Below are positions 3,110-63,900 of a stretch of DNA of 64,000 bases, one piece after another (position 1 is the stretch's first letter; every line of letters starts with the position of its first letter). The translations under genes were made by a program, and so were the position numbers. Location of the stretch: assembly GCA_002269645.1 (NCBI GenBank), contig NIVC01001475.1:186001-250000 (forward strand). The letters are read 5' to 3'. The notes beneath the pieces were generated by a model. That model did no database searches, had not been told where the DNA came from, and worked only from the letters and a program-made list of their open reading frames with translations. Source of the stretch: Macrostomum lignano (taxonomy: Eukaryota).

Positions 3110-4345
3110 TGCCAAATGCAGCACATCATTTGCAATATATACCTTGTGTGCCAGAAAATTTAGCAATGGTCAAGTTTTATTTGTTAAATTATTTTGACTC
3201 TAGAAAAGTATTTTATGAACTATTTTAAGTACAAATAAATACTTTTAAGAGACTTAAGCCTGATTAAGCACTAATTCTATGCTTCAAAACTTGTTATAAT
3301 GTATCTGACACTGAAAAGCTGCAATAGTCTATGGCCAGAATGTTTGAACATTTTTAACTTGAAAAAAGGTCTATAGTTGAGTCTAAACATCAATGATCTT
3401 TAACAAGTTGACAAATAACAAATAAATAAAAGTAAAGTCTTAAATTTAGCAAGGCTATACTGCGCACCATTCAGGGGACTTCACAAGCCCTATTTAAAAC
3501 ATAATTAGAGGAATTATTGCATCAACTGAACCCTGTGAAGCCATTTGGGAACATCCTATTATGGATTTCCTACTACTATAGCATGTAAAGCTTTTGCTGT
3601 TCAGTGGCAATTTGACCATAGACAAAAATACTTTTTATTTGTTTATATTAAGACTTGTTCACTTGTTAATATTATGGCCATAGCCTATTGCAGCTTTTCA
3701 GTATTAGATTTATATTAACAAGTTTTGAAACAAAGAATTAGTGCTTAATTAGGCTTAAGTCTCTTAAAAAGTATTTATTTGTACTTAAAATAGTTTGTAC
3801 AGTACTTTTCTAGAGTCCATAGTCGTGATCATGGCAAGCATATGCTGGAATGAAAATTCATGTTTTTTTTTCAATTTTACACCAAGACTAAAATTGTTTA
3901 TATACCATTTTTTAATAAATATATATTTTAGGAAATTCTAAACTTTTACTAAAGTTTAAAACAGCTGTTTTTTGCTAAAAATGATATTCTTTGTTTTAAT
4001 TTTGATTTTCTCATGATTGCATTAATATTTTCTATTTTAGTTTCAAATTATTTTTAGTGTTTTTGACATTGGTTGATATTTAACTACACAATTACATTAG
4101 CCTTGAACTTGACTATTTTTTGTACATTGACTATGTATATTTTATGTTAAACCTGAAAATTCCATCTGCCAAGTGTATGCCAAGATTGTCATTGAGAGCA
4201 AAAATACACTGGAAAATTCTCGCATAAAGGCCACCTTCCAAACTATGGTCTAGAGTCAAAATAATTTAATGAATGGAACTTGACAGCTACCAAAAATTCT
4301 TGTGCATTGCAATTTTGTATGAAATCTACTACTTTCCTAATTGGC
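3110..4345. mobile_element. MITE-like element with long inverted repeats; right arm interrupted by an insertion
   Basis: 3195-3337 is the reverse complement of 3675-3817 (~145 bp, high identity). The right arm resumes at 4249 (TCTAGAGTCAAAATAATTTAA), matching ~3165-3203; the outer limits are degenerate. Confidence 0.75.
3817..4248. mobile_element. Non-autonomous insertion with CCATAGT...ACTATGG ends and 8-bp TSD
   Basis: TCTAGAGT at 3809-3816 and 4249-4256 flanks a 432-bp segment with 7-bp inverted termini. Confidence 0.65.
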
Positions 4346-11021: not shown

Positions 11022-11340
11022 GCCGGCGGGCTCTCCGGCAGGTTGGCCAGCGGGCTCTCCGGCAGGTTGGCCAGCGGGCTCTCCGGCAGGTTGGCCAGCG
11101 GGCTCTCCGGCAGGTTGGCCAGCGGGCTCTCCGGCAGGTTGGCCAGCGGGCTCTCCGGCAGGTTGGCCAGCGGGCTTTCCGGCAGGGTCGCCGGCGGGCT
11201 CTCCGGCAGGTTGGCCAGCGGGCTTTCCGGCAGGGTCGCCGGCGGGCTCTCCGGCAGGTTGGCCGGTGGCTCTCCGGCAGGTTGGCCGGTGGCTCTCCGG
11301 CAGGTTGGCCGGTGGCTCTCCGGCAGGTTGGCCGGCCGGT
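11022..11340. repeat. 24-bp tandem repeat in the Gypsy integrase tail (PAGEPAGQ)n
   Basis: gccagcgggctctccggcaggttg and variants, ~13 copies. Confidence 0.9.
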
Positions 11341-11450
11341 GCAGCAGCAGCAGGTTCAACCAGGGGCCGCAGCTGTGAGAGGTGCCGCATGCAAGACTGT
11401 TCGCCACCACCTTCGTCACCTTCGCCACCACCACCGTTGTCGTTGACCAC

Positions 11451-27260: not shown

Positions 27261-27564
27261 ATCTAATTGACAATATAAGCTAAGAGAGTCACTATGCCAT
27301 GATAAAAGAGCTAAGGGAATCATTAATGTAACTGATTAGATGGGACTAGAGGAGTAACTTTCTCAATGATAGGATAAGCTAGGAGAATCATTATGTTAAT
27401 AATAAGATAGGCTAAGGAAATCAATCTTATTGATCTTATTGATTAGGTATATTATAGAATCATTGTCTCACTGACAAGGTAGGTTAGGGAAATTACTACT
27501 ATACTATTAAGGAAGATTAGGGTCATTATTCCTAAGGGATATTAAAAAGGATAGATAGCTAATA

Positions 27565-29848
27565 CACCATTTTACCCTCGCTTTTGAACAAACTCCGTTT
27601 CACTTTAGACAGTCGGAACTTCAGTTTAGACACTTTTAGACTGGAGCCCCGAATCTACATTCACTATCAACAAACTTTGTTTCAGTATCGACAGCTAAGC
27701 TTTGTGGTGCTACACTTCTATCTATTTACATAGGCAAGTAAGGAAACGCACATCCAGATCTAGGCGAAACTCCCTTTCACTTTCGACAAACGCCACTTCT
27801 TAAACAGTCTATGGTCTAAGCTGCTGAAACTCCGTTTCACTTTAGTCAACCAACATTCAAGATAGACAAGATACATTCACTTTAGACATGAACTCACACG
27901 GGAGGTGTGCAAAGGTTTCTTAAGCATGTTCATGGAAATTTCCAAGGATAAAAACTTTCATTGTAACGGAAGATGGCGTGCAACGAGGATTTTTTTATCA
28001 ATAAACAGTTAGTTTGGCGGCCTAATTTAAAAGGCATTTGAGAATGCAGGACTGTTCCGAAAAAAAATTGTTTAACAGCGTCGTGATTAAAACGGCAAAG
28101 CCAGCAGAAGCGAAACGATAGTTCAGCGATGGGTTCTGATTTCCATTAGCCATCAATTGGCTGAGACGCCAAGCACCGTGGCAGATACCTGAAGCAATGG
28201 CTGAGCCACCGTGCCACCTCTGGAGTGATGCAGTTGGCGGTGCCGTCCACCTCACGGAGTAGAATGTCTCGGCGGTACGCCGCCAGGCTGCGACCAGCAA
28301 GCTGCTGCTCGGTCGGCCTGATGAAGGAATCTTGGATCGCCGACAGTCGACGCTTCAGAGCCGCCTTCCAGCATGATATCGCGTTCTCAACTTGGGTGAG
28401 AAATGGGCTGTAGGGTGGCAGTCGTCTCACTTCCACAGCGTCTTCGACCTCGTAGCTTTCGGCGTCATTGTGGCTGCTGACGTTGTCTATGACAACACTG
28501 ATGCTGCTGTCCGGAAACACGCTGTGGAAGTTGGCGATTGTGATTGTGAGAAACTCGCCGAATCTCTCCTTTGTCATGCCGCTGTCGTATGACTGGAAGT
28601 GCACGATTCCAGCAGCCGGGCTTACTGCCAGGCAGACGGTGATGCGCTGTCCCTTCTGTCCAGAAACCTGTCGGTAACACGCACTGTCCACGAAGAGATC
28701 GTCCATAGGATCGCCGCATCCATGTGTTGAAGACAAACTCGTCAATAAATATCTTCTCTGTGTCAGATGCTTCGGGCGAGCACATCCACTGAGCAAATTG
28801 CTCACGAGCGGCTACAACCCTTGGCGAGTTGCGCTCAGCTGGAAGATCTCGTGCCAGCTTCGTTGTGAACAGTGCACCGTCGAGTTTTATGCTCAGTGTC
28901 TTTTCTGAGACATGCTGCTTCTCAGGAAAAGCTTGTCTGAGCATGGTGTTCATCTCTTTCAGAGTCAGCAATGGATTCTGCTCCACGATTGCGCACAAAT
29001 ATTCTTGCATCTCACCATCCCACTTCACATTCTTGGCTCCGCCGCACGAAAGCTTCTCCACTCGTCCACTCCTCACAATTGAATATGCGGTCGTTCTTTT
29101 GATGTCTGCAAGTTGAGAGGCCAGTAGGATAAAATCTTCACCCTTCTGGTAAGTGGAGAGAAGTCGCTGCATGCCTGTCATGGTTGCTCACTGGCTGTCG
29201 CTGTTGCGCTGGAGCCTCGTCTTCAAAGTCGCTTTCACTTTCGTCTTCGTAACCAGGCTCCTCTTCTAGGTACGAATCTTCACTGCCCTCCATCTTTTTC
29301 AGGGCTTGCTTTAGCGAATATCTTTAGCGAATAGGCTTCAGTGTTTGGAGCGAAGGGAGAGTAGGCTGAGACTTTGGTTTGGAACTTTGGTAAGGTCTGG
29401 CCGGCGACCCTGCCACCCCACACTGTTCAAAGGGGTGAAAAGGGTGTCTTAAAAGGTATCTATGGTCAAAACCCCTCTTTCAGCCAACATTAGGCGTAAA
29501 CAAATGACGCATCTAAGAATCTGTCTAAAGTGAATGTATCTTGTCTATCTTGAATGTTGGTTGACTAAAGTGAAACGGAGTTTCAGCAGCTTAGACCATA
29601 GACTGTTTAAGGAGAAGTGGCATTTGTCGAAAGTGAAAGGGAGTTTCGCCTAGATCTGGATGTGCGTTTCCTTACTTGCCTATGTAAATAGATAGAAGTG
29701 TAGCACCACAAAGCTTAGCTGTCGATACTGAAACAAAGTTTGTTGATAGTGAATGTAGATTCGGGGCTCCAGTCTAAAAGTGTCTAAACTGAAGTTCCCA
29801 CTATCTAAAGTGAAACGGAGTTTGTTCAAAAGCGAGGGTAAAATGGTG
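27565..29848 (-). mobile_element. IS630/Tc1-superfamily DNA transposon with ~325-bp TIRs and TA TSD
   Basis: 27565-27888 is nearly the exact reverse complement of 29522-29848; TA at 27563-64 and 29849-50; internal direct repeats AACTCCGTTTCACTTTAG. Confidence 0.95.
28146..29293 (-). pseudogene. DDE transposase with two frameshifts
   Basis: HTH (QRLLSTYQKGEDF...KRTTAYSIVR), FIDE, VIDNVSSH and LPPYSPFLTQVEN motifs; a 4-nt insertion near 29170 and a 1-nt shift near 28680. Confidence 0.88.
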
Positions 29849-30951
29849 TATAAGAATGCTAATATACCTACTAGTATATAGCTACAGTATATATATATTT
29901 AATATTTTTACCTTGTCTAAGCCTAATTAATAATTATATATTTAAATTTGTTTAGTATACTTAAAGAACTATATCTCCAAAGGGCAAATACAAGAGAATC
30001 ATATATCTTTAAAGATAGCTAGATAGGTTGGTTTAGAATCTTATAAATGTAAGTCCCTAGCTTAGGGCCTACTGCTTAGTTAATATTTAATAATATAGGC
30101 CTAGAGTTTATTGTATTAGGCCTAGATCTAGGCCCTATATTTTAAAAACTTGAAAAAATTTAAATTAGGTCTAATAAGTTGTATCAATTGGCCTTAAGCT
30201 ATTTTTGTAAGTATTAGGCCTTGGCCTATGATATCATAATAATAAGCTAAAACAAGTCATAACCATAAGATCGCTAGGCGTAATAATAGTACTATTTGCT
30301 TGAGACTTAAATAAGGCTTTAGATAGATATAGGCCCAGGCCTTAGCCCTTAGGCTTAGTCTTAGAAAAAATAAAAAAGTAGCCTATAAAATTTTGATTAT
30401 AAATTTGCAAAATTCAAAAATAGGTCTAGTCAACTAGCCTATAAGATAGCTGTATTTATATAAGTAAACTAAATGAAATTAAATTAAATGAATCAAAAAG
30501 AAAACAAACAGTAGGCCCCTAAGCCTATATTAAGCCAAGGGCTACCAAAGCCAAAAGGCAAAGTATAATTTTCAAAATTTTTATTGAACAAATAGTCTTG
30601 TCTATAATTTACAACTTTACATTAGCAAATTAAAATTACTAGGTCACTAGGCTAGATAGGCCTAGGCCTACTTGTCTACTAAGTGTCTTACATATACAGT
30701 ATTAGGCCCTGGGAAATTGTTAGGCCTACAATCTACATTATCCTTTTTAAGTAGGGCCTAAAAAACAATGCTCTGTTGTTGCTATAGGGCCTAGTTTAGA
30801 GCTAAGGGCCTAGCTAGGCCCATTTAAGATTTAGCCTTATGATGATTCAGGCTTTCTCTGACTTATAGTTTGCTATACCTATAAATGTCTTATTTAAACC
30901 GAATTTAAATAAGCCTAGGCCTAAATTAGCCTGCCACGAGCGATGCAGCGA

Positions 30952-33309: not shown

Positions 33310-33818
33310 CAGGCCCTAGGCCTTAAATGCATCATATATGCATTATGCTATTTAACGCAATACACTAGGCACAAGCCTAAAGCAAATTTATTAATCATAC
33401 TCAGGACAGGGCAAGGCACACCGAATGTCCTACCCAGCAGGCAGCAGCCCAGAGTCTGAAAATTTAAGTAAATTCGACTTACTCGAAGGTCTGGCTATTA
33501 ATTGCTTTCGAAGAAAATCAAGGAAATCATGTGATTCAACCTCACCATATACGCGAACTATTTTATCCTACTTAAATCAGTAGTAGCACCAGCATAAGCA
33601 TTGAAAAAATACTAAGAAAAATTTCCCGTGACTTAATTTTTTTATCGAGCCAGAAGATCTGAATCGGTTTTCGTAAACTTTTTTACTACCTAATTCGGAA
33701 AAAAATATCTAAAAATCTTAGCGCTCGACAGTAGCAGTTAATGCGCTCGTGTCGTGCTCGTGACTTTCTGAAATTATTTTGTCTCCCCTTCCCTTTTGAC
33801 TCTGCTGTTATGTATATA

Positions 33819-33951
33819 ATCTTTGTCTGTTCTTTTGGTTCCTATGGCAGAGAAAGGCCGAGGACGCTGTTCTCAGGCCGAGGCGAAGCCGAGGCCTTAG
33901 AATTGCGTCTGAGGTCTTTCTGCCATAGACACCAAAAGAACAGACGAAGAT
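33819..33951. mobile_element. Short hairpin MITE (~40-bp TIR containing CTATGG/CCATAG)
   Basis: ATCTTTGTCTGTTCTTTTGGTTCCTATGGCAGAGAAAGGCC / GGTCTTTCTGCCATAGACACCAAAAGAACAGACGAAGAT. Confidence 0.8.
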
Positions 33952-33964
33952 CGTACTTAATCTA

Positions 33965-34625
33965 CAGATATTGGAAGCGACTGGGAGTGGGAGTGAGGTA
34001 TTCGTCAAAAGCGGGGGTGTGGTGGCGCAGCCCCCCACATTTAACCATAGACATAAAAATTAAAGTAAAAGATTCGATGCTTAAATTAAAAGCGAGAAAG
34101 GAAAGGTTTGGGCAGCTTGGGCACACCCCAGATCATGAGCGCTGCCTTCCGTGCATTTATAAAATCTACGACGGCTACCGACCGGAGCAATGTAAGCACG
34201 ACAACCTCTTTCTGACTTGGTTTCGAAGTGAGTCTGCCATTAAGAGCGACAGATGGTACAAGAATGGACCTATCGGCCGGCATACTCTCGACTCCATTGT
34301 GGCGAATATCACCAAGCCCGTGTCTACGGATGGTAAATTCTCAAACCAGTCTCTAAGGAAGACTTGTGCCAGCACGTTGCATCGGGCTGGACTGGCTAGG
34401 GACGATATAGCCCGCGTCACTGGACATTCGTCCAACGCTATTGAGAGGTACATACGGCTAGACGTCCAGGACCATTCGCGTATGACCTACGCTCTACACG
34501 CCGGAGGAGCCGTGGAGTCCAATGGGCGGACCAATGAGCAAGATGTCGTGTCTGAAGGTACTACCAAGAAGATGCGCATGACTGTCCACGGTGACACCAA
34601 CACCGTAGAAATCATGTTCGAGTGA
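33965..34625 (+). CDS. Tyrosine recombinase catalytic domain, Crypton/DUF3504-like (5' end uncertain, possibly partial)
   Basis: RC..IYKIY...RP...LFL...WYKNGPIGRHTL...FSNQSLRKTCASTL..AG....IARVTGHSS..IERY matches the HxLR / GH / Y box of Crypton-type YRs, with His replaced by Gln. The listed ORF's N-terminus runs through a MITE. Confidence 0.8.
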
Positions 34626-34995
34626 ATCGGCAAGAATGAATTGGTATTTACTGCTGTTGATAGTTTATACTTCTAATGGACTAACTGACAAATTATAGTC
34701 GTTCTAAAATGTCCTCAGGCCTTGTTCTTAGGCCTGTTAACCGGTTAACAGGCCTCGTTTTGAGTTCTCAGGCTTCGTTTTTTAGTGAGGTTTGGCCATA
34801 GACTATCGTTCCACTAGAAAAGAAGGAGCCTAGGAATTTAGTGTGAACCGTCATATCTGTAGGTTAAATGTCATTAACTGCCCGCTAATTTGCATTAAAG
34901 TAAGTGTGACTCCTGCAAGCGGGCTTAAATGTAGTCTATGGCATTGAAAGGCAAGAGTAAGTGCCCAGCGGGCACAAAGGTCATGGTACAATATA

Positions 34996-35992
34996 CACTC
35001 AGCAACATTGAAAGTTTCCACCTTAGCGCGAGAAGGGTCAACGTTTTAGTGGGTGGAGATATTCGTGGTTTGAGCCATAGACAAATATATAATCCGGATT
35101 CAAACGAAGCAAAGGAACAGCAAAGAAACAAAGTACGCGAGCATGGGTGACAACTTGCCCAGAACAGGGTCAGTAACCCGTATAGCAGCCACGTGCGTAC
35201 AGCAGAGTGCTCACTCTCCGGGGCATCCCCAGAAAATCTTGCGGTAGTTGTTGCCATGCAGTAGACAGTGATTCGCGCAGTTGGGCAACGTTTTGCGGCG
35301 GATTGTCGCGCCGAATCGAGCACCGCCACTGCTGCTGCCTCCAGTGGATCCTTTGCATGCCCATTGTTCCCAGCTGGCCACATGATGGCATAGGTTGGGG
35401 TCAGGCGTGGCCGTTTGCGCATCTTACGACTATCGTCGTCGGATGGTTTGGGCGCTCAGGATATTCCCTCGCCTGCTCCTTTCAGCCCACATCAGCCGTA
35501 GCTGCAGGGTGGCTGGCAATGTGGGGCTTCCCTTCACCATTCGCAGCAATCGCCGGTCCGCCCTCCTAGTTGTGTTGCGCATATTGAGCCGCCGGCCGCG
35601 CGTGGCGTGCGCCACGCTGCCTGTTTCTCTGCACTTGATCTACAGTTTGCGGACTGCTGTGTGCGACCGCCCAATTTGGCGAGCAACAGCTCGGATGGAC
35701 ATCCCGGCGTCCAACACATGCCAATGGCGCGCGCTCGTTCCAGGTCGGTCATTTGGCGAACCATTGCGTGGAACGTGGATTTTAGACTCCTGTAAGCTGC
35801 TGCTGTCTGCTCCGTGTAACTGTTTCCTTCGACCTGTCTGGCGTCTATGATCCAAGTTTCTTTCTATGGCCCAAGTGCGTGTTGACGAAATCATCAATCG
35901 TCTATGGCACAAGTCTGGCGACAAAACCAGTTTTGAAACTCTAAATATACACGGCTGGCGCGAGGGTGGAAAATTTTCAATTTTGCTGAGTG
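34996..35992 (-). mobile_element. Internally deleted Tc1 element (TA TSD)
   Basis: TIR CACTCAGCAACATTGAAAGTTTCCACC at both ends; paired-like HTH (ERARAIGMLDAGMSIRAVARQIGRSH) and C-terminal (AWQQLPQ..MPRRV....GCYTGY) remnants. Confidence 0.88.
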
Positions 35993-36328
35993 TATATTCG
36001 ATGCATTTAATTCCCTATAGTCCGCTTCAATATGCACATAAATCATATAATATATAGCTATATGTATTCTAACTCAATGCTCATAATTCGCATAGCTACT
36101 GTGAATAGCACGTGTATAGCTCTAGCTCGTAGTTTAATCGACTTGGTAGTGATGGAGCGCATAAACTATACCTCTATTATTTTCTTTATTCTCAAACCCC
36201 CTTACGCAACTTTTAGTCCCCTTTAGACAGGTAAAATTCTCCTCGTAGCCATGTGTTCTCATTAATAATCATCACGCATGTACTCCTCTCTCTCTCTCTC
36301 GATCTCTCCTGCCTGACCTGCAGCTCAG

Positions 36329-37762
36329 GGGGGTGTTTCTCGAAACTCACGTAAGTTCTATGGTAAGTTAGATCGTAAGAAAGAAATTTACGTGTAGCGT
36401 AAGTTTGCTCGTAAGACGCTTTCTCAAAACTCACTTAGACTTTGCGTGGCTTACGCTGTTCGTAAGTAATATCTGAAACGAAAAGTTGCATGTCTATGGT
36501 CATAAATCTGTAAATATCTTTACTTTGTCTATCGTAAGTTGCTTGGGTACCTCTCATTTCGCCGATTCTCGTTTCGCCGATTCTCGTTTCGCCGAATCTC
36601 ATTTCGCCGATTCTCGGTTCCCCGACATTCTCATTTCGCCGATTCTCGGTTCCCCGACATTCTCATTTCGCCGATTCTCATTTCGCCGACATTTTAATTT
36701 CGCCGATTCTCGTTTCGCCGACATTCTCATTTCGCCGATTCTCGTTTCGCCGACATTCTCATTTCGCCGATTCTCGGTTCGCCGAAATTAGTTTCATAAC
36801 CATCTGGACATTAGACCATATACAACTACACTAATGCAAGTGTGATTTAGATGTCTATGGCTTGAAAAATAAAGTTAAAATTAGGAATTCTTCCTTCTGT
36901 ATAGTCGATGGTAATCCTTCTGCATAGTCTATGGTAAAAAGTCTATAGCCAGTGGTATATATGTATGGTAGGAGGTTGAGGAATAACATCCAACTTTCAA
37001 GCAAACGCACCATGGCTCAAGCAGCACTACAATTAGCTACTTTTGTCCCAAGTTCGCGTGGAGGGCAGCTGCTTCACATTATGGGATATTTGTACCGGCT
37101 CGATAAGAAGACTGAAGCAAAAGCATTTTACAAGTGTCGCCGCGAAGGTTGCAATGCCAGGGCCATCGTCGAGGGTGGATAGGTGTCGCACACGAGTGGA
37201 GAGCATCGTCATGCAATTGATGAAACTGAAGCCCAGAGAATGGCAAACGTATCTTGGATTAAATTAAATGCCCGTAAGCCCAAATGGGCTGCAAAAAGCT
37301 ATATTACCAATACAATACTTTATTTTTCAAGCCATAGACATCTAAATCACACTTGCATTAGTGTAGTTTTCTATGGTCTAATGTCCAGATGGTTATGAAA
37401 CTAATTTCGGCGAACCGAGAATCGGCGAAATGAGAATGTCGGCGAAACGAGAATCGGCGAAATGAGAATGTCGGCGAACCGAGAATCGGCGAAATGAGAT
37501 TCGGCGAAACGAGAATCGGCGAAACGAGAATCGGCGAAACGAGAATCGGCGAAATGAGAGGTACCCGTTAAGATCAACCTTACGAAAGACCATAGACATA
37601 CGAACGTTTCGAGAAACAGTCTTTTGCGCAAAGTTACGAACTCGTAAAGTTGCGATCAATCTTACGCATAGCTAACTTGCGAGCCCTTCGAGCAACCCGT
37701 AAGTGTAGCTTACCCAACTTACGTCTATGGTCGATCGTAAGTTGCTTTCGAGAAAGACCCCC
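36329..37762. mobile_element. PIF/Harbinger-type MITE with CAG TSD, carrying a nested element
   Basis: GGGGGTGTTTCTCGAAA...TTTCGAGAAAGACCCCC flanked by CAG on both sides; CGTAAG/CTTACG subrepeats. Confidence 0.7.
36546..37565 (+). mobile_element. TIR element with a FLYWCH zinc-finger fragment (Mutator-like), bounded by GGTACC
   Basis: Arms 36546-36873 and 37318-37565 built of TTTCGCCGATTCTC repeats; interior SSRGGQLLHIMGYLYRLDK....FYKCRREGCNARA....H.H. Confidence 0.8.
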
Positions 37763-37859
37763 CAGATCCTCCGATTACGTCCTCCGCCGCGCGCTCGAGA
37801 AAGAAGACGGTTTTGTCGTCGCACGCCGCAGGAGCTGACGTTTCCCCGGTGTCACGATC

Positions 37860-38480
37860 GCTGCCCTCGCTTTTGCTGACTACATCGTCCTCTCCTGCCG
37901 AGACCCGGAAGCCGCTCAGCGCATCCTCACCCGCCTCTGTCATGAAGGCGAGCGAGTTGGCCTGAGAATCAGGCCCAAAAAACCGAGGTCCTGCACGTCG
38001 GCATCGTGAACGCCCCTGCTCTGATCCTCCCTAGCGGTGACATCATTACAGAGTGCCGGGACTTCCGCTACCTCGGCTCTCTTGTCGCTTCTCCAGATGA
38101 AATCATTGCAAACCGGCGTGGAGAAGTCTGGAGGGCAGCTGACCAGCTCAGTCCTGTTTTTGCCTCATCGATGGACGATCAGCTCAAACTATGCATCTTC
38201 CGAGGTGCGGTCAAGCCCATCTTCCTCTATGGCCTTGAGGCTGTGCCTATCACTGCAAGCCGGGAAGAAATCTTGAATGCGGCCTACAGAGCTCTGCTGC
38301 GCTTCTCGCTCAACATCCGCTACCCGTGCACCCTGTCGAACCGCGCCCTGATGGTGAAAACCGGCATCCCAACGCTAAGCGACATCCTAAGACAACGAAG
38401 ACAGAGACAAAGACAGCCAACCCGCTGGCAGCTGTTGTTACCAACCCACCTCAGGATCGGGATTTCGCCGAGGACCATTC
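37860..38480 (+). pseudogene. 5'-truncated RTE-like LINE reverse transcriptase fragment
   Basis: LAFADYIVL..., GLRI, FRYLGS and IFRGAVKPIFLYGLEA motifs, with frameshifts. Confidence 0.75.
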
Positions 38481-38645
38481 CGGCACCATGACCCTCATTG
38501 ACATTTTAATGACGATAATTAAATTGTGTGGAACGAAACAGCATATTTAGCCATAGACATATCTCTAGTGACGGCGGAATGAATTGGAATTCTCTATTGC
38601 GGATTAAATTGAGTGATTCTAGGACCAAATTGACCGGGAAATGCT

Positions 38646-39251
38646 ATATTAGGAGCAAGCAATTTAATAATCAGTGGGGAACCCAGTGCTAGAAGATAGA
38701 TTTCTCGGTACTCTATGGTCCAAACCATGGGCTTTGGAGCAACCAATTTAATAATCCGAGCACCCATTTAGTCATTTCCAGTGTTATTTGTATCGCATTG
38801 GCTGCAAATAGACGCACGCATTCAACATGGTAGAAGACGAGGAAGCCAGCGAGCTTTTGGAAGAAGACGGAGAGCTTTGTCACTGCTGATGAAGCGCTAA
38901 AAGAGCAAGATCATGCAGCACCGTGGCTCCACTGTTGACGCTAAAAAACATTTCGAAACACCATGGTCTTGAGTAGGCTTGAGTGAAGCCACAATAATCA
39001 AAAGCCTCGACAAGCAGTTATTAATCATTTTGAAGTACTTGGAAGAGATGCGGACATACCGGTGGTTCGAAACTCGCCAGAGAGAATATAGCGTGGAGGG
39101 AGGCAGGAACTCGCCCAGCGACTGTCTGGTTTAACCCCAGATTATTAAATTGGTTGCTCCAAAGCCCATGGATTGGACCATAGAGTACTGAGAAATCTAT
39201 CTTCTAGCACTGGGTTTCCCCACTGATTTTTAAATTGCTTGCTCATAATAT
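38646..39251. mobile_element. MITE with ~110-bp TIRs
   Basis: 38646-38757 is the reverse complement of ~39140-39251. Confidence 0.8.
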
Positions 39252-39745
39252 CAAATGGCTTGCAAAAAGCTATACTACAAGCCCTTGAGGAAACCCCCAT
39301 TCAGCGCGTGTCTATGGAAAAAACCCCTCACCCTACGGGGAGCTCCATATAGGCAAATTGTCTACTGCCAGCGGATTGGTTGATTTTGGAAAATGTTGGA
39401 TTATGGCGCGGTTAGTTATACCATAGAATAATAAAGATCAGTGAGGAGTGATGTCAAAAAATCAGTTGCAAAGCCCAAGGAAGCAATTTATACATAGAAG
39501 AGAGAAGCAGAAGAAAAACGAAAAGCAAAATTAATGCATTCAATCAACTTGAAGAAGCTAAATGATGGAGAACCTATAGCTTAGATGGATTCTCGTCAGC
39601 TGAGTTGGATTTTAGACTACGCCCCCAGCGCGGTGACTGCGACTGGAGATGAAATTTCAAGGTTGAAAACTATCGGATCAAGATGCGTTAGGCCATATAG
39701 ACAGTGAAAACTGACTGAGAGACAAGCAAATCTAACAATCTAAAG

Positions 39746-40509
39746 TAGCATTTTGCAGCCCATTTGGGCCTACGCGCATTGAATTTAACCCAAGATATGT
39801 TTGCCAATGTAACGGAGCTTTGTCTATGGTAGCAAGGCTGGCACTGCGGCATTTAATTTGTTCCAACAAGCATCAATTTGGTCCATAGCTTCATTTGCAA
39901 CTGCTGCGGAGAAGATCTGCCCCACAATTGTGGACCATACGAGTATGCTGGGCAGTCTGGGCAGTCGAACGAATGTGATCGAAGCGCTCGACAGAGGTGA
40001 ACACTCAAAGGACATTGCAAGGCTGCTGAATGTAAAAGAAAAGGTGGTTTACAGCATCCATCAGCGCGTTGAAACCACTGCAAGCAGAGATCGCCTGCGA
40101 AAGGGTAGCAATCACCAAGGCAAGTTGCTGGAGCCTCATGCAGGTCTAACTTCTACTCGACGGAGTTAAGACGAACCCTTTGTTGACGTTGCAGAAAATG
40201 CAGTAGAAGTTAAAGAAACAGTTCCAGCTTTCGACTGTCAGCAAAGCTCTGGAGAAGCAACTGGAAATTGTTGGTAGAGACGCTGAGCGGCACTCAAAAC
40301 AACCACAGACGGTTGCGAGAAGGCAAGAGTTTGTCGAATGGCTTACGAGCGTTTGGACCAATTTAAATCAGCCTTGCTACCATAGACAAAAGCTCCATTA
40401 GGCAACCGTGTTTTGGACATGGATGACGGAATAGATCCTTCCTATTCCTTCATCCATGGTTTTGGATAAAATTCAATACGTGTAAGCCCAAAAGGACTGC
40501 AAAAAGCTA
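39746..40509 (+). mobile_element. TIR element with a Tc1/mariner-like HTH remnant
   Basis: TAGCATTTTGCAGCCCATTTGGGC...GGAGCTTTGTCTATGGTAGCAAGGCTG is mirrored at 40350-40509; interior VIEALDRGEHSKDIARLLNVKEKVVYSIHQR. Confidence 0.65.
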
Positions 40510-40882
40510 TGTTTAATTTTTATCACTTTTAAGTCTAAACATTTTTACTCTAGTTCAGCATGAGCGTGAGTCATGAAATTGAGTATAGTTTCGTACTCAA
40601 AGCTCCAAAAGTAATTCTAGTAAATTTAGTTAACCGAACTTCCATAGCCGTCTTTGGCTGATGTGATAATATTTGCATGAATCATAACTCTTTCTTTGCC
40701 TACAGTATATCGCGCGTAAACATGATAAGATGGAAAACAGGAATCCGACCAAAACAGATGCTAATTTTACTCATCTGTCTTGGCTGCGAGTGTATAAATA
40801 TACAATGCCCAATGCACGACCAATACAAACGCTTCAAAAGTCACCAGCTGGAAGCCCCCACCGCCACTTTTCTGTTGCAACC

Positions 40883-41863
40883 ATGACTCGTCATCGAGAA
40901 ATTGAGCTGATTTTTGCCCTAGTCATCGGGTTGATCCTACATGCACCTGTTCGTAAGTTTCTATTTGTAGCGCTGTCGTATACTCACTGTACCTGCATTC
41001 TACTTTACAATGAAATTTGATCGATTTAACTTTAAAAATTACGTTTAAAAATTTTAGTATCTCAAGAGCCACCGACTGCCACCGCTACGATTGAGACAAG
41101 TAGCATTGACGCTGTAAAATCTTCAGTTGGTGACTCTGCCACCACTTCAGGAGTGGAACTGTCTGGTGGCAGCAGCACAGCTGGTACTGCCACCACTTCA
41201 GGAGTGGAACTGTCTGGTGGCAGCACAGCTGGTACTGCCACCACTTCAGGAGTGGAACTGTCTGGTGGCAGCACAGCTGGTACTGCCACCACTTCAGGAG
41301 TGGAACTGTCTGGTGGCAGCACAGCTGGTACTGCCACCACTTCAGGAGTGGAACTGTCTGGTGGCAGCACAGCTGGTACTGCCACCACTTCAGGAGTGGA
41401 ACTGTCTGGTGGCAGCAGCACAGCTGGTACTGCCACCACTTCAGGAGTGGAACTGTCTGGTGGCAGCAGCACAGCTGGTACTGCCACCACTTCAGGAGTG
41501 GAACTGTCTGGTGGCAGCACAGCTGGTACTGCCACCACTTCAGAAGTGGGCTCATCCAGTAGCACATTGTCTAAAGACAGCACGTCATCACCACCGTGTG
41601 CATCAACAACTCGAAAAGACTGCAACTGCCACAAGATGACACCTGGATCGCTGCGGTTGGAGAATCACAATCTCTGGTCAGCTGTTATCGGCTTGGCCAT
41701 AACCTGCTCTCTACTAGGTGTTGTACTGGTGGCAGCTATCATATTTATTATTCTCATGCGTCGAAGATTTGCCAATCAAATGCCGATTCGCCGGGGCAAG
41801 AACAAGTACGGATTTCGATTCGCAACTCCGGCGACTATGGACTTTTCGCATGGACAAGTTTAA
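40883..41863 (+). CDS. Type-I membrane mucin/proteoglycan-like protein; join(40883..40952,41058..41863)
   Basis: Signal peptide MTRHREIELIFALVIGLILHAPVLS; phase-1 GT-AG intron; 8 copies of ATTSGVELSGGS(S)TAGT; a short Cys cluster; TM helix (VIGLAITCSLLGVVLVAAIIFIILM) followed by RRR; short cytoplasmic tail. Confidence 0.8.
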
Positions 41864-44242
41864 CAAATTTTATTTTGTGCTGGTTGTTGCGGTCATTGTA
41901 AACCAAGTCAGTGTGCCTTATTGTTTGTTTATAATTTTTTACGCTTTGTTTTAACAAAAATTATTGACTAAAGCTTCAAAAAATTTAACAGCTATAGTTA
42001 GAACCGTATTTTGTAACACCGGGCCAGTTCTGAAGCTTATTAATCGGTAAAATAATTACGTCGAATGTTTTATAGCTCGTACGTTCATCGCTTTGAAACT
42101 GAAATCTTGGCAGATGTTGTATACATTATTGTACATTTGTATTTGCATCGTATTTAATGGTAGTTTCCTCTGGCTTACTACTCAAGGGCTACAAATGTAC
42201 TATATTTGTACACCAGCACTCTAGAGAAAGAAAGAAAGAACTAAATATAAGAAATTGTCTATGGGCAAAAACTCCTCATTTTGTAAATTGAAAAAAACAG
42301 TAACTGATAATATACTACTATTTTTAGGGGTACGACAATATGCCCCGAGTCCTGAGAAAACAAAAAAGCACTCCCCAAAAAAGATTCGTCATTGGACTGC
42401 AGTTTCGCGTGTTAGACCCTTTCTTTTAGTGGATGTGAATATATATATGAAAGAAAAACGACTAAAAATAGAAACAAAAATACCGCGAGCCGAAACACTG
42501 AAGTGTGAGTAAATAAAAAATATGTGAGTACGCCCCCTTGACCCCGCTGTCTTCTGACTTTGCCATAGACATTTACAGCGGGCCGTGAAGCCTACTGAAT
42601 GCATTGGAGTAAATGGGATTTTACCATAGACAGTCTCATCAGCGGGCCGTGAAGCGCGGTTTCTCGCCCGCTAACTATAACACTAATATGATCGTTCTAC
42701 TCGTATGTCGTTTCTGTTCTTGTTGTTTGATAAAAAATAAGAATGATAAATGAACTCGTCTATGACAATAATCGAATATTTAGCTCATCTCGTGATATTA
42801 ATACACAAGCTGAAAACGATTCAATCGCCATTCTTCAACCTCTCGGTGTAATTCCGACACATCAGATCAGTATAGCGAATAGGAGAGAGAGAGAGATACG
42901 GAGAGTACAGTGGCAGTTGAAAGCGCTGTTCTGCGCTGAAAGTCGAGGGAACTGAAGGTGAGTCCGGGCCCCATCAAAGATAACCACCGAATCAGCCTCC
43001 ACCAGAACGTCCAGCATTACTCTGGACGTTAAACTGTTCTCACAACAGGCTGATCTCGATGAGTCCATCCTTGAGTTCTCGCCGTCCAAATTTTCAATCC
43101 AAACTCTTTGAAGTTTAGAAGTAAGCTTATAAAGTCACCAATTACTGTCTCTAGTCTAGGGGACGAAATGCTTTGCAAACTGGACAACGAAACTGTCTAT
43201 GGCATTATCTATAAATTTAGCTCCCATAAAGAACAGTAGCGGTAGAAAAAGGTAGTTATATGTCACGAAAGCTGGCAGGGGACAAGTGTCCTATATTTAA
43301 CTACCGTTATTTACTTTTGAGTTTTTGCCATTTGTCCCGTTGTTATATTGTCATTACCAAATCATCAGTATTACATGTACTTATAAATGACAAAGTATCT
43401 ATTTACTGAGGGAAGAAAGAATCAAATAAACATATTGCTTTCTTGTCGCATCTTCGTAACCTGTACGAGTGTATATTGAGCATCGTTTTATTGTCGGATT
43501 TGATTAATTCTATTAGAAAGCAAAAACGGCATTCGATGTTCGATCTACGCAGACTATTCTACAGACTATTAAATACTTCATAAAAACGAGATGTAAGCAT
43601 AAAGATTATCTCTTCTTATCAAAAATAAAAGATCAACATAAAATTATCAAATTAATTTCTCTCAGAGGTCAAATTTGGTTAGTTCAATGCGAAGTTGAAA
43701 ATGTGTTTTTTTTCAGTGAAAACATATTCAGTTTTAAGTAAAATGAGTATTCTAATACTTTTAGTCGGATCACAGCAAGACGAAAAATTTATATAGCAAA
43801 AAGTTATCATTGATACATTGATATAATAACACGAATAATACATACAGCTACATCATTATATTGTTAGTTATGTGAATGTTATAACAGGTCGCAACAAAGG
43901 ACAGTAATGTTAAAGATAAATGTCTTTAATTGGCAGTTTCATATTGTGTAGCTCATCAAATAATCACGAATAAACAAAATAGCTTTGTTTTTTTACTGGA
44001 TTTGGTTTGTTTAGTTTTTAGTAGTTTAACGCCAACTTGCTACTAAAAGTACTGCCTGCCCTCTGCCGAGTTGACAGGCGATGACTGGCCCTGCAAAATC
44101 AAGGGAGGAAAAGGTTCATGTTTGAAATTCAAGCCTTTCTTCTTTTCGTTTCTCTATTCAAATACTGTAATATTTGTCGTGCAGCACATATTTGTTTATC
44201 TCTAGTCATTGTTAATACTGCAGTAGCCACACAATGCCATTA

Positions 44243-50463
<6,221 letters not shown>

Positions 50464-55760: not shown

Positions 55761-56147
55761 AATTCCTCTTCAAAAGTGTTTTTCAGAAACATCCCAGTAA
55801 AGTGCGTTGGGTTGAGAAGCTCGAACTATGGGCTTCATCAGATAGGTTTGTGACGCCAGCTAATGCGTTTCTCTTTGCCACCCCATTAGTTCTAATGAGA
55901 GGCGTGTAGAAAAATATCGATGCAGTCGGTTGTGTCCCAGTCTCACAGCTTCATCTTTTTCACACTTTCATCCCGTTGACAGGCCCCCGCAAGATGTAGC
56001 TTAGAACAGGCACGGGTACAAAGTCCCTAGACTGCAAAGTGCTTTTAAACCTCTGTTGTAACATTTTTTTAATTCAGAAATGTTGCAATATGTCCTGAAA
56101 ATTGTCTGGAACCTGCTAAAGAACAGATTGAATACAAATTGAAAGCA

Positions 56148-56524
<377 letters not shown>

Positions 56525-57028: not shown

Positions 57029-57411
<383 letters not shown>

Positions 57412-59724: not shown

Positions 59725-60030
<306 letters not shown>

Positions 60031-60586
60031 GTAATAGCAATCTCTGTATCAATTACGAGTATTTTATTGACTTCTATAACTTGGCAAAAGTATGGGAGAA
60101 AAAGCGTATACATCACAGGAGAAGCTATTTGCTTGAACGGGATGGGCTGTGAAGCAAGCGAGGGAAACCTCGGAGAAGCATTGAGATTGAGACTAATGGC
60201 GTTCTGGACAGCAGGAAAGAAACCGTAGCCATGCAGGATGTAAAATTGATCCTGGGAAGTGAGTTGGCAAGAAAATCCCCTACTGCACTATTGCTGCTGC
60301 TGCTGCTGTCTTAGTCAATACTTTTCTCTTACCTTAGCAGCTAGCTACGAACGATAGCTAAATACGATTAATACTTTTTCTATAGTCACTATTTTTCATG
60401 TCAGCCTCTATCAGCTGATCAGCTTCCGCCGCACCTAAGGTCTAATCGAATAGGCTATGTTACTATTAGCTACAGTGTATTAATCAGCAAACCATTCCAT
60501 AAATACATAGTTTTAGCTCATTTCTAAATTGGAAGACAATGACTTTTTATCTATTAGCCTTGGTCACTTCCAGTCCTTAGTCAAAT

Positions 60587-63282: not shown

Positions 63283-63329
63283 GTAGAGCAAGGGGGATTG
63301 TGGAGTGGATGTTTTTACATTGAGCCCTT

Positions 63330-63900
63330 CTAGAGACCCTGACACTCTTTAGGAAGACCCTGACACTCTTCAGGAGACCCTGACACTCTTTAGGGAGACC
63401 CTGACACTCTTCTAGAGACCCTGACACTCTTCAGGAGACCCTGACACTCTTCAGGGGACCCTGACAGTCTTCAAAAGACCCTGACACCCTTCTAGAGACC
63501 CTGACACTCTTCAGGAGACCCTGACAGTCTTCAAGAGACCCTGACACCATTCTAGAGACCCTGACACTCTTTAGAAAGACCCTGATACTCTTCAGAAGAC
63601 CCTGACACTCTTCTAGAGACCCTGACACTCTTCAAGAGACCCTGACACTCTTCAGGAGACCCTGACAATCTTCTAGAGACCCTGACACTCTTCAAGAGAC
63701 CCTGACACTCTTCAGGGGACCCTGACACTCTTCAGGAGACCCTGACACTCTTCAGGGGATCCTGACAGTCTTCAAGAGACCCTGACACTCTTCAGGAGAC
63801 CTTGACACTCTTCTAGAGACCCTGACACACTAGACAGCCTGACACCCTAGAGAGCCCGACAGCCTAGAGACCCTGACACCCTAAAGACCCTGACACGCTT
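63330..63900. repeat. 21-bp minisatellite in innexin intron 2
   Basis: gagaccctgacactcttcagg, ~27 copies. Confidence 0.95.

What the first reader, a model, noticed from the sequence alone, without database searches (positions are those of the whole stretch)
33840..43202. Swarm of CCATAGAC/GTCTATGG octamers shared by unrelated elements around a tyrosine recombinase
Seen: by manual count ~22 exact copies in the window, ~19 of them within 33.9-43.2 kb, where chance predicts well under one. The motif or a 1-nt variant sits in the arms of at least seven different TIR elements (3327/3677, 27807/29596, 33842/33923, 36492/37590, 36853/37332, 38711/39179, 39822/40380), always GTCTATGG on the left and CCATAGAC on the right. 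It also forms outward pairs with short extended IRs (34796-34941, 38551-39317, 42624-43202). Mirroring in TIRs roughly doubles the count but does not explain sharing across superfamilies. Inference: (a) a recombination or target site of the adjacent Crypton-like YR building a cassette-like nest, (b) a host DNA-binding-protein site convergently kept in transposon ends, or (c) termini of small P/hAT-like elements that insert into other elements.
Basis: partly seen in the sequence, partly recalled or inferred. Interest (0 to 1): 0.75.

Follow-up and report, generated by a model that had tools for sequence, protein, structure and literature searches.

The report
Shared protein-binding site in flatworm transposons
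A 15-base DNA word recurs, far more often than chance allows, inside several unrelated kinds of jumping genes in a Macrostomum-like flatworm genome; it is most likely a docking site for one DNA-binding protein that these elements all exploit, not the point where DNA is cut or recombined.

Summary
There are 24 exact CCATAGAC/GTCTATGG copies in the window, 20 of them in 33.84-43.2 kb where 0.17 is expected. About 20 are independent, and their flanks are unrelated. The full motif is an asymmetric TTTnKR-CCATAGAC-W with no partner half-site.

The window resembles Macrostomum lignano. The adjacent recombinase fragment belongs to a roughly 1.8-kb Crypton-like unit whose ends I defined from two independent M. 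lignano insertions. The window copy is 33812-34865. The octamers lie 28-167 bp inside the 5' end and about 64 bp inside the 3' end, so they are subterminal, not terminal.

The same site flanks a second recombinase subfamily (29-31% identical). It also sits in the inverted repeats of three unrelated Tc1/mariner-like elements, a FLYWCH-bearing fragment, a foldback composite and an M. lignano satellite. Closer recombinase relatives from other sources lack it, and one carries a different word at equivalent positions.

Best reading: a genome-specific binding site for one trans-acting protein, kept convergently in transposon subterminal regions. The crossover/cassette and small-element-terminus readings are not supported. 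Which protein binds, and whether it drives transcription or helps transposition, is unresolved.

The parts
33812..34865 (+). Internally deleted copy of a ~1.8-kb Crypton-like (type A) tyrosine-recombinase unit; holds 3 exact octamers and 1 variant
   Evidence: Its termini, GTATATAATCT... and ...TCTGTAGGTT, match the ends of the 1,823-bp unit shared at 99% by two independent M. lignano insertions, L001 9733-11555 and L016.
33819..33951 (+). 5'-terminal hairpin of the type-A unit; the stem pairs CCATAGAC (33923) with the 2-nt variant TCCTATGG (33840)
   Evidence: Inverted repeat I23. DNA fold -49.3 kcal/mol, z = -12.4. In the consensus fold, 19 pairs keep pairing with both sides changed relative to the M. 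lignano copies.
34122..34625 (+). 3' part of the recombinase gene (residues 264-441 of the M. lignano protein P0004); it lacks the first catalytic Arg region, so it is non-functional
   Evidence: tblastn gives 55% identity, E = 1e-62, and finds no N-terminal remnant elsewhere in the window. Pfam finds DUF3504 and Phage_integrase. Alignment A1.
34712..34803 (+). 3' subterminal module of the type-A unit: a ctcaggcc...ggcctg hairpin followed by CCATAGAC (34796), 62 bp inside the 3' end
   Evidence: It aligns with L001/L016 11410-11491, where the word is CCATAGAA.
3327..3334 (-). Octamer (GTCTATGG on the + strand) in the left arm of palindrome pal3
   Evidence: Its mirror copy is GGCTATGG.
3616..3623 (+). 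Octamer in the right arm of pal3; it has no mirror copy
27807..27814 (-). Octamer in the left 333-bp TIR of Tc1/mariner element A, 249 bp from the end, between two of the element's own direct repeats
29596..29603 (+). Mirror copy in the right TIR of element A
33923..33930 (+). Octamer in the 5' hairpin of the type-A unit; orthologous to L001/L016 9820
34045..34052 (+). Octamer about 70 bp before the point where recombinase homology resumes
34796..34803 (+). 3' subterminal octamer of the type-A unit, 171 bp after the stop codon
34934..34941 (-). Octamer 69 bp outside the type-A 3' end; element unassigned
35075..35082 (+). Octamer in the left TIR of Tc1-like T35, about 85 bp inside the end
35900..35907 (-). 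Mirror copy in the right TIR of T35. The surrounding TIR sequence has diverged, but TTGnGCCATAGAC is kept
   Evidence: One-mismatch copies lie at 35843 and 35862.
36492..36499 (-). Octamer in the left subterminal region of the composite TIR element
36853..36860 (-). Octamer near the inner end of the left foldback arm
36927..36934 (-). Octamer 86 bp upstream of the ATG of the FLYWCH ORF; 1-mismatch copies lie at 36904 and 36941
37332..37339 (+). Mirror of 36853 in the right foldback arm
37590..37597 (+). Mirror of 36492; the arms are only 72% identical but the word is exact
37723..37730 (-). Octamer in the right subterminal region of the composite; its mirror at 36356 is TTCTATGG
38551..38558 (+). 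Octamer; element unassigned
39310..39317 (-). Octamer; element unassigned
39822..39829 (-). Octamer in the left TIR of Tc1-like E2, 81 bp from the end and 115 bp upstream of the ATG of the HTH ORF
40380..40387 (+). Mirror copy in the right TIR of E2
42257..42264 (-). Octamer; element unassigned
42563..42570 (+). Octamer; first of two 61-bp-spaced units (CCATAGAC ... cagcgggccgtgaagc)
42624..42631 (+). Octamer; second of the two units
43195..43202 (-). Octamer; element unassigned
27559..29854 (-). Element A: a Tc1/mariner-type DNA transposon with 333-bp TIRs (98% identical) and a frameshifted transposase. It has its own repeats, AAACTCCGTTTCACTTTAGAC, 3-4 per TIR
   Evidence: Self-BLAST. DDE_3 E = 4.7e-11; HTH_32 below cut-off. 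ORFs and TIR sequence.
34990..35998 (-). T35: a degraded Tc1-like element with diverged TIRs (coordinates approximate)
   Evidence: TIR alignment A2. HTH ORF with weak Pfam HTH hits.
36325..37775 (.). Unclassified composite TIR/foldback element. It has outer TIRs CAGGGGGGTG..TTTCGAGAAA, CGTAAG subterminal repeats, and inverted 15-17-bp tandem arrays (36552-36789 and 37406-37559)
36949..37179 (+). FLYWCH zinc-finger ORF fragment at the centre of the foldback
   Evidence: Pfam FLYWCH E = 1e-8, 35.6 bits, above cut-off.
38646..39251 (.). M38: a palindromic MITE-like element with CAGTG-type inner TIRs and 1-mismatch copies of the word (CTCTATGG at 38711, CCATAGAG at 39178)
   Evidence: Inverted repeats I5 and I14..
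39741..40513 (+). E2: a Tc1-like remnant with ~90-130-bp TIRs and an HTH ORF
   Evidence: (D6, I9).
3196..3817 (.). pal3: a 620-bp palindrome; the outer ~150 bp of the arms are about 90% identical

Best explanation
The octamer is the core of a ~15-bp asymmetric site, TTTnKR-CCATAGAC-W. I propose that this site is bound by a single sequence-specific DNA-binding protein that is present in this flatworm lineage but is not the recombinase of the neighbouring element.

Several unrelated mobile-element families carry one to three copies, in either orientation. They are two Crypton-like recombinase subfamilies, at least three Tc1/mariner-like families, a FLYWCH-bearing fragment, an unclassified foldback composite and palindromic MITE-like pieces. 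The copies lie in subterminal regions 30-250 bp inside the element ends, usually between the end and the start of the element's ORF. The local 'swarm' arises because these elements are nested together in one transposon graveyard.

Shown: the enrichment; the independence of the copies; the full extent of the motif; the subterminal position; the superfamily diversity; and the mismatch with recombinase phylogeny.

Inferred: that a protein binds the site; that the factor is host-encoded or supplied in trans by one element family; and its role. I commit to promoter-proximal activation of element transcription as the most likely role (about 0.35-0.4 of total probability). Next most likely is an architectural cofactor for assembling transposition complexes at element ends (about 0.2).
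For: Enrichment and independence.

The motif is monopartite with a T-rich 5' extension. There is no inverted or direct partner at fixed spacing and no other signal within +/-100 bp.

The site is subterminal, not terminal. Two independent M. lignano insertions share exactly 1,823 bp, with octamers or variants at +28, +87 and +167 from the 5' end and 64 bp inside the 3' end. The window copy has the same termini.

The carriers are unrelated. Pfam finds DDE_3 in element A, FLYWCH, and DUF3504/Phage_integrase. Element A has its own TIR repeats, and the octamer lies between them.

There are signs of constraint. The exact word is kept in both arms although the arms are 72% identical (36492/37590) or almost fully diverged (T35). 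All three type-B flank copies are exact between proteins that are 67% identical.

The word follows the genome, not the recombinase. Type A is 49-51% identical to the L008, L015 and L005 proteins, which lack the octamer, and 29-31% identical to type B, which has it.

The position suits a 5' regulatory role. Copies lie 77-221 bp upstream of the ATG in type A, type B, L006, E2 and the FLYWCH ORF. In the young 99%-identical M. lignano type-A family, both exact copies are 5' of the ORF and the 3' copy is degenerate (CCATAGAA).

The site is absent from about 10 host-like genes in L001, L016 and the window.
Against: No binding or expression data exist here, so the factor is hypothetical.

The conserved 3'-flank copies have the same orientation as the 5' copies in both recombinase subfamilies (type B +114 and +150; type A +158 to +209). 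A different word sits at equivalent 5' and 3' positions in a distant relative (L008). Both facts fit a role in transposition, or the recombinase's own accessory site, better than a pure promoter role.

Both clusters seen (window and L001) contain recombinase genes, although L001 was fetched through that gene.

The organisms behind the Logan/ENA contigs are unknown, and some flanks are short (L005: 170 and 136 bp). The 'tracks the genome' argument is therefore not airtight.

Ten window copies lie in sequence I could not assign to any element.
Confidence: 0.5

Rival explanations
1. The site is the accessory ('arm-type') binding site of the Crypton-like recombinases themselves. It would be read by their N-terminal QRICH1-like/core-binding region and needed at both ends to assemble the recombination complex. 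Its presence in Tc1-like TIRs, the FLYWCH fragment and the satellite would reflect hitch-hiking non-autonomous derivatives or captured fragments.
For: Copies flank both recombinase subfamilies on the 5' and 3' sides with co-varying orientation. A distant relative has its own word, GAGTCCCATTR, at -333, -115, +142 and inverted at +111. Another has a 13-mer at -207/+177; the chance expectation for a shared 13-mer is about 0.007. Both octamer clusters contain recombinase genes. There are at least 9 near-identical type-A copies in M. lignano.
Against: Types A and B are only 29-31% identical yet share the identical 15-mer, while proteins 49-51% identical to A lack it. The recently active M. lignano type-A family has a degenerate 3' copy. 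Element A is a bona fide Tc1/mariner element with its own repeats, and the octamer is integral to both TIRs. The same is true of T35 and E2. No additional Crypton termini occur in the nest.
Confidence: 0.17
2. The octamer is the strand-exchange (crossover) core of the recombinase. Segments between octamers would then be cassettes that are excised, inverted and re-integrated, building an integron- or shufflon-like nest.
For: An exactly conserved asymmetric 8-mer with degenerate flanks is what an overlap region that must match between partners would look like. The copies cluster in both orientations next to recombinase genes. CryptonS elements mostly end in TATGG, which is contained in GTCTATGG (PMC3212892).
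Against: Homology between two independent insertions runs well past the octamers on both sides. There are no inverted binding arms and no partner half-site. Hairpins are not generally associated with the word: the 5' side, the 3' side and background fold equally. Inside the TIRs of Tc1-like elements the flanks on both sides of the word are mirrored, so the word is not a junction. The window recombinase is a dead fragment.
Confidence: 0.06
3. The inverted octamers are the termini of small cut-and-paste (P/hAT-like or MITE) elements that insert into other elements.
For: There are several short inward-facing pairs spanning 60-314 bp: W 34934/35075 and 42257/42563; L001 4056/4153 and 9616/9668; L006 2043/2150.
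Against: No target-site duplication of any consistent length flanks these pairs at offsets 0-3. The interiors are unrelated to each other. Wherever element ends are defined, the word is internal. Outward-facing and direct pairs are equally common.
Confidence: 0.03
4. All copies descend from one ancestral repeat family, or the excess is compositional or an artefact.
For: The region is extremely repeat-rich: 29% of the window matches itself, and there are many tandem arrays.
Against: Flanks are at random identity apart from known mirror or orthologous pairs. After masking all self-similar DNA, CCATAGACA is still among the top non-low-complexity 9-mers. Shuffles never approach the observed count. 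The same word recurs in an independent NCBI assembly and in Illumina-based Logan contigs.
Confidence: 0.02

Closest known systems
Host-factor sites (for example IHF) in the subterminal regions of many unrelated bacterial insertion sequences, transposons and phage att sites (from my own knowledge, not tested here)
   Same: A short asymmetric site for one trans-acting protein, found in either orientation tens to hundreds of bp inside the ends of mechanistically unrelated mobile elements. It is not the cleavage or crossover point.
   Different: This is a eukaryote, the factor is unidentified, no binding data exist, and a transcriptional role is at least as likely as an architectural one.
Transcription-factor motifs recruited by transposon promoters, for example heat-shock elements in M. 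lignano LTR retrotransposons (PMC12801592, seen; abstract only read)
   Same: Transposons of the same genus carry a host-factor motif in their 5' regulatory region. Convergence across families is expected under selection for expression.
   Different: Here the motif also sits 3' of the ORF in non-TIR elements, spans DNA-transposon superfamilies, and was not seen at about 10 host genes.
Crypton DNA transposons, CryptonA/DUF3504 group (Kojima & Jurka 2011, PMC3212892; Glomhopper paper, PMC13465315)
   Same: The neighbouring element is a single-ORF unit encoding a DUF3504/tyrosine-recombinase protein. It is multi-copy, has discrete ends, and has no TIRs, LTRs or reverse transcriptase. As reported for animal Cryptons, it has no terminal repeats.
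   Different: The 5'-terminal ~140-nt hairpin and the subterminal short repeats are not features described for animal Cryptons in those papers. Short terminal direct repeats, the proposed recombination substrate, were not found.
Arm-type sites of lambda-family integrases (from my own knowledge)
   Same: Multiple ~10-bp sites in both orientations, distal to the crossover point on both arms of the element's attachment region.
   Different: Here the word does not co-vary with the recombinase lineage, and it is also present in DDE transposons.
CENP-B box in satellites, bound by a pogo-transposase-derived protein (from my own knowledge)
   Same: One protein-binding box per satellite unit. The 83-bp array at L016 13340-14336 carries one octamer per unit.
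   Different: There is no evidence of a centromeric role or of the binding protein.

Membership tests
Crypton (tyrosine-recombinase DNA transposon), applied to the unit next to the swarm | Encodes a tyrosine recombinase with the R...HxxR...H/W...Y catalytic signature | tested here: met
   Type B has ALRGG, NHSLRAT, TGHRS and AYKR, with Phage_integrase at 39.6 bits (above cut-off) and DUF3504 at 86 bits. Type A has Q in place of the first His and only a weak integrase hit. The window copy is a 3' fragment.
Crypton | No TIRs, no LTRs and no reverse transcriptase; a discrete multi-copy unit | tested here: met
   A 1,823-bp unit is shared at 99% by L001 and L016 with unrelated flanks. The ends, GTATACATT... 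and ...CTGTAGGTT, are not inverted repeats. At least 9 copies lie on different contigs.
Crypton | Short (4-6 bp) direct repeats at both termini as the recombination substrate | tested here: inconclusive
   No shared flanking or terminal repeat is seen in three insertions (L001, L016, window). Kojima & Jurka also found none in animal Cryptons. Three copies are too few to exclude 2-3-bp microhomology.
Recombinase crossover site / integron attC or shufflon sfx-like site | The site lies at the boundary of the mobilised segment | tested here: not met
   Homology between independent insertions extends 28-87 bp (5') and 64 bp (3') beyond the octamers.
Recombinase crossover site / integron attC or shufflon sfx-like site | Two inverted binding arms around a 6-8-bp spacer, or a folded hairpin that brings inverse core sites together | tested here: not met
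   There is no partner half-site at any offset within +/-52 bp. Folding energies 5' and 3' of the word equal background. Hairpins occur only in the recombinase-flank modules.
Termini of cut-and-paste elements (hAT/P/MITE) | The motif is at the extreme end and is flanked by a target-site duplication of fixed length | tested here: not met
   No consistent duplication in 9 inward-facing pairs. The word is internal in A (249 bp), E2 (81 bp), T35 (~85 bp) and type A (28-167 bp).
Tc1/mariner transposase-binding repeat (IR-DR type) | The repeated site within each TIR is the element's own family-specific sequence | tested here: not met
   Element A's repeated TIR unit is AAACTCCGTTTCACTTTAGAC, and the octamer lies between two such units. 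The same octamer occurs in TIRs that are otherwise unrelated.
Promoter-proximal transcription-factor site | Located upstream of transcription units, works in either orientation, often in multiple copies | tested here: inconclusive
   There are 1-3 copies 77-415 bp upstream of the ATG in seven element types, in both orientations. However, there are also conserved 3' copies, no transcription-start data, and no TATA or initiator at fixed distance.
Promoter-proximal transcription-factor site | Occupied by a protein and required for expression | not testable with these tools
   This needs pull-down/EMSA, footprinting or reporter assays.
Nematode-type small-RNA (piRNA) upstream motif units | A motif followed at a fixed distance by a conserved initiation position | tested here: not met
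   No position outside -6..+8 exceeds noise (maximum IC 0.24) within +/-100 bp.

The most novel reading that the evidence does not exclude
The octamer could be the shared overlap (strand-exchange) core of an animal site-specific recombination network. Active Crypton-type recombinases (type B keeps the full catalytic signature) would excise, invert and re-insert any DNA bounded by the word. They would capture pieces of Tc1-like and other elements and build cassette nests next to recombinase genes, making a eukaryotic counterpart of integrons or shufflons. The longer homology seen between the two M. lignano copies would then reflect a composite unit rather than the minimal mobile segment.
Probability: 0.06. 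Interest if true: 0.9.

Novelty: new variant of a known kind. Interest (0 to 1): 0.6.

Why it matters
If one protein docks on the subterminal regions of Crypton-like, Tc1/mariner-like and other elements in Macrostomum, that would point to a common dependency of otherwise unrelated transposons. It could be a shared activator or a shared assembly factor. It would also be a handle for switching many families on or off in a flatworm that already has transgenesis.

The work also gives the first base-level boundaries, terminal hairpin and subterminal repeats for an animal DUF3504/Crypton-like element in the material available to me. The literature I could search reports no terminal features for animal Cryptons (PMC3212892) and nothing on Cryptons in Macrostomum.

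The comparative hint that other lineages carry different words at equivalent positions makes the cis-requirements of animal Cryptons testable.

Tried and rejected
- Literature search for the octamer returned only primer sequences.
- Rfam found no family in the window.
- 'Every octamer sits 3' of a hairpin' (an attC-like idea) was rejected. MFE and z-scores 5' and 3' of 39 sites equal each other and the background.
- A partner half-site at fixed spacing, direct or inverted: none.
- A fixed-distance TATA, initiator or other signal within +/-100 bp: none.
- Target-site duplications around inward-facing pairs: none.
- More Crypton termini in the nest, which would mark non-autonomous Crypton units: only the one unit.
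- An N-terminal remnant of the recombinase elsewhere in the window, or a pseudo-site in the gene that would explain the truncation next to 34045: none.
- A pure 'sense GTCTATGG about 100 bp upstream of the ATG' rule was abandoned once type A and L006 showed the opposite orientation.
- 'Octamers are the terminal direct repeats of the Crypton' looked attractive after (1.6-1.8-kb spacing, co-varying orientation). It was overturned by the two-copy boundary comparison.
- Identifying the organisms behind the Logan/NCBI accessions from the literature: no hits.
- The innexin search only placed the window among invertebrates, with a cestode as best named hit. The recombinase search gave the Macrostomum link.
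- One look-up (P0016) found no contig.

Full report
**1. The observation**

CCATAGAC/GTCTATGG occurs 24 times in the window, against 1.56 expected from dinucleotide-preserving shuffles. Twenty copies lie in 33840-43202, where 500 shuffles give a mean of 0.17 and a maximum of 2. No single-mismatch variant exceeds five copies in the window. In the cluster there are 20 exact and 19 one-mismatch copies, against 0.28 and 6.8 expected. The exact word is therefore enriched about 70-fold and its neighbours about 3-fold.

Self-BLAST puts 14 copies in mirrored arms of inverted repeats and 10 in sequence with no other copy in the window, giving about 20 independent origins. With all self-similar DNA masked, CCATAGACA is still among the top non-low-complexity 9-mers. 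Across 56 copies from the window and related loci, the 40 flanking positions match at 10.8 on average. That is random, apart from known mirror or orthologous pairs. The copies therefore do not descend from one repeat.

The 33842 partner differs at two positions. One Tc1-like element has the opposite left/right orientation.

**2. Which genome**

An innexin exon (62662-63333) marks an invertebrate. ORF 33741-34625 ends in a DUF3504/Phage_integrase domain. Its closest relative, at 55% identity, is a Macrostomum lignano protein. Transposon fragments in the window match M. lignano DNA at 83-90%. The window has the very high tandem-repeat load reported for that species (PMC5730564). The source is therefore M. 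lignano or a close relative.

**3. The word recurs in related loci**

The M. lignano locus L001 has 11 exact copies in 21 kb. All lie in the 6 kb around two divergent recombinase genes, and none lies in 11 kb of host-like genes.

- Contigs L006/L007 (type A) carry 4 and 3 copies.
- L010 (type A) carries 1.
- L011-L014 (type B) carry 3 each.
- All of these lie in the few hundred bp flanking the ORF.

In type B the copies read GTCTATGG in the gene's sense, at -221, -112 and +114 in L001 and at -195, -123 and +150 in L011. The two proteins are only 67% identical and the flanks have otherwise diverged. In type A the flanking copies read CCATAGAC in the gene's sense.

**4. The neighbouring element and where the word sits in it**

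The M. lignano type-A protein has at least nine copies that are at least 90% identical, on different contigs. A second copy (L016) aligns with L001 at 99% over exactly 1,823 bp, from 5'-GTATACATTCTCC... to ...CTTTCTGTAGGTT-3'. The DNA outside is unrelated, and there are no terminal inverted repeats and no obvious duplication. These are the properties of a Crypton-type unit. They agree with the report that animal Cryptons show no terminal repeats (PMC3212892).

The window holds an internally deleted copy at 33812-34865 with the same termini. Its recombinase homology starts at residue 264.

Within the unit the octamers are subterminal:

- A ~140-nt hairpin starts 7 nt from the 5' end. It pairs CCATAGAC (+87) with an imperfect partner (+28).
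- This hairpin folds with z = -11 to -12. Between the window and M. lignano copies, 19 pairs keep pairing with both sides changed.
- A further GTCTATGG lies at +167, and the ATG at +268.
- A 3' copy lies 64 bp inside the end. It is exact in the window and is CCATAGAA in M. lignano.

The word is therefore neither the terminus nor the junction of the mobile unit.

**5. The motif itself**

Thirty-nine independent sites give T-T-T-n-K-R-CCATAGAC-W. Information falls to noise beyond -6 and +8. No direct or inverted partner is preferred at any offset up to 52 bp, and no other position within +/-100 bp is conserved. Hairpins are not generally associated with the word. This is the signature of a single asymmetric protein-binding site. 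It is not that of a two-armed recombinase core, an attC-like folded site or a small-RNA promoter unit.

**6. Other carriers**

- Element A (27559-29854) encodes a frameshifted DDE_3 transposase (E = 5e-11). It has 333-bp TIRs with its own three or four 21-bp repeats, and the octamer lies between two of them, 249 bp from each end.
- T35 (~34990-35998) is a second Tc1-like remnant. Its TIRs have diverged almost completely in the 45 nt next to the word, yet both keep TTGnGCCATAGAC.
- E2 (39741-40513) is a third. The word is 81 bp from the end and 115 bp upstream of the HTH ORF.
- A FLYWCH zinc-finger fragment (E = 1e-8) has one exact and two degenerate copies just upstream of its ATG.
- An unclassified TIR/foldback composite (36325-37775) carries five exact copies.
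- In M. lignano, an 83-bp satellite carries one copy per unit.

The sharing across superfamilies is therefore real.

**7. Who reads the site?**

Two lines of evidence pull in different directions.

*For a role tied to the recombinase elements.* Both subfamilies keep copies on both sides of the ORF in matching orientation. More distant relatives have their own short words at equivalent positions:

- L008 has GAGTCCCATTR at -333, -115 and +142, with an inverted copy at +111.
- L003 has a 13-mer at -207 and +177.

It is only 29-31% identical to type B, which has the identical 15-mer. The recently active M. lignano type-A family has a degenerate 3' copy. Three Tc1-like families carry the word as an integral part of their TIRs.

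The reading that covers most facts is a factor specific to this genome lineage. It could be host-encoded or supplied by one element family, and several transposon families have converged on its site.

The preferred position is between the element end and the ORF start, 77-415 bp upstream of the ATG, in 1-3 copies and either orientation. Because of this, I rate promoter-proximal activation as the most likely role. An architectural cofactor for transposition comes next. The conserved 3' copies are the main argument for the latter.

**8. Rejected readings**

- Termini of small cut-and-paste elements: no target-site duplications, and the word is never terminal.
- One ancestral repeat, or compositional bias.
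- Crossover core of a cassette system: boundaries, site architecture and phylogeny all argue against it. I keep it at about 6% because only three unit copies could be compared, and because an exactly conserved asymmetric 8-mer is what an overlap region would look like. CryptonS elements mostly end in TATGG. I treat that as a coincidence worth remembering, not as evidence.

**9. Limits**

- Only about 130 kb of related sequence could be fetched, all of it through recombinase genes, so genome-wide density and association with other families are unmeasured.
- The organisms behind the Logan/ENA contigs are unknown.
- Ten window copies sit in DNA I could not assign to any element.
- No transcription-start, binding or polymorphism data were available.

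**10. Verdict**

The feature is a new variant of a known kind: a trans-factor site shared by unrelated mobile elements. It comes with a newly delimited Crypton-like element as a by-product. Interest is moderate to high, chiefly because the question is now directly testable in an organism with transgenesis.

Noticed in passing
window 4489-5487 and 30096-30916 (also 652, 24874, 62675): A second, separate swarm. The palindromic octamer TAGGCCTA occurs 15 times (about 1 expected), mostly as isolated words in two AT-rich blocks with unrelated flanks, often near related words such as taggccc or aggcctac. It is absent from L001 and L016.
   Followed up: partly
L016 13340-14336: An 83-bp satellite in M. 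lignano, about 2 kb downstream of a type-A unit, with one CCATAGAC per repeat unit (11 exact copies).
   Followed up: partly
window 33959-33968; L001 9857-9866: An inverted near-copy of the unit's 3'-terminal decamer (TCTGTAGGTT) lies just after the 5' hairpin in both the window and M. lignano copies. It may be an internal complementary region or a vestigial inverted repeat.
   Followed up: no
L001 6650-6800 and 4700-4910; L011 1-250 and 1950-1986: Type-B units from two sources share palindromes next to the octamers (ctccgggat...atcccggag and catgcc-ttttgagggag...) and a variant word (tataaaCCATAGATa). The boundaries of the type-B unit could not be defined.
   Followed up: partly
L001 9760-9800 versus L016 9750-9830: The loop of the 5' hairpin is partly deleted and inverted in one of two otherwise 99%-identical copies. 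This looks like flip-flop or palindrome instability.
   Followed up: no
L008 13, 231, 2009, 2040; L003 9429, 11656, 9471, 11718: More distant recombinase elements from other sources carry their own short words in both flanks, at positions equivalent to the Macrostomum octamers (GAGTCCCATTR; AACAGGGCCTTAC inverted; AATCTACTCC direct).
   Followed up: partly
alignment A1; L001 10001-11326 versus 5034-6425: Type-A proteins have Gln where type B has the first catalytic His (NQSLRKT versus NHSLRAT), and they reach the Pfam integrase cut-off only in type B. Type A may be catalytically impaired although it is multi-copy.
   Followed up: partly
L001 9138-9500 (minus strand): A 120-aa acidic ORF lies divergent from type-A gene 2, with a sense GTCTATGG 167 nt upstream. 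It is outside the 1,823-bp unit and has no significant Pfam hit.
   Followed up: no
window 41062-41863: A 48-bp tandem array (8.4 copies, 97% matches) lies inside an ORF that encodes Ser/Thr/Gly-rich repeats and ends in a hydrophobic, membrane-anchor-like segment. It may be a host mucin-like exon in the middle of the nest.
   Followed up: no
window 47661-50316: Long 21-, 42-, 189- and 342-bp nested tandem arrays with strong GC and AT skew, which create ORFs of 900-965 aa on both strands. No Pfam hit.
   Followed up: no
window 45885-46448, 46718-47256, 56146-56524, 57029-57411, 59725-60034: Five long tetranucleotide microsatellites, (GTCA)n, (GATA)n, (CAGA)n, (TAGA)n and (AACT)n, each of 300-560 bp.
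   Followed up: no
window 38006-38491: An ORF that looks by eye like the C-terminal tail of a LINE reverse transcriptase, but it has no Pfam hit at E <= 0.05.
   Followed up: partly
window 10000-16000: A GC-rich block (55-67% GC) in an otherwise 30-50% GC window. It has overlapping ORFs on both strands and a 24-bp array at 11017-11333. Not examined.
   Followed up: no
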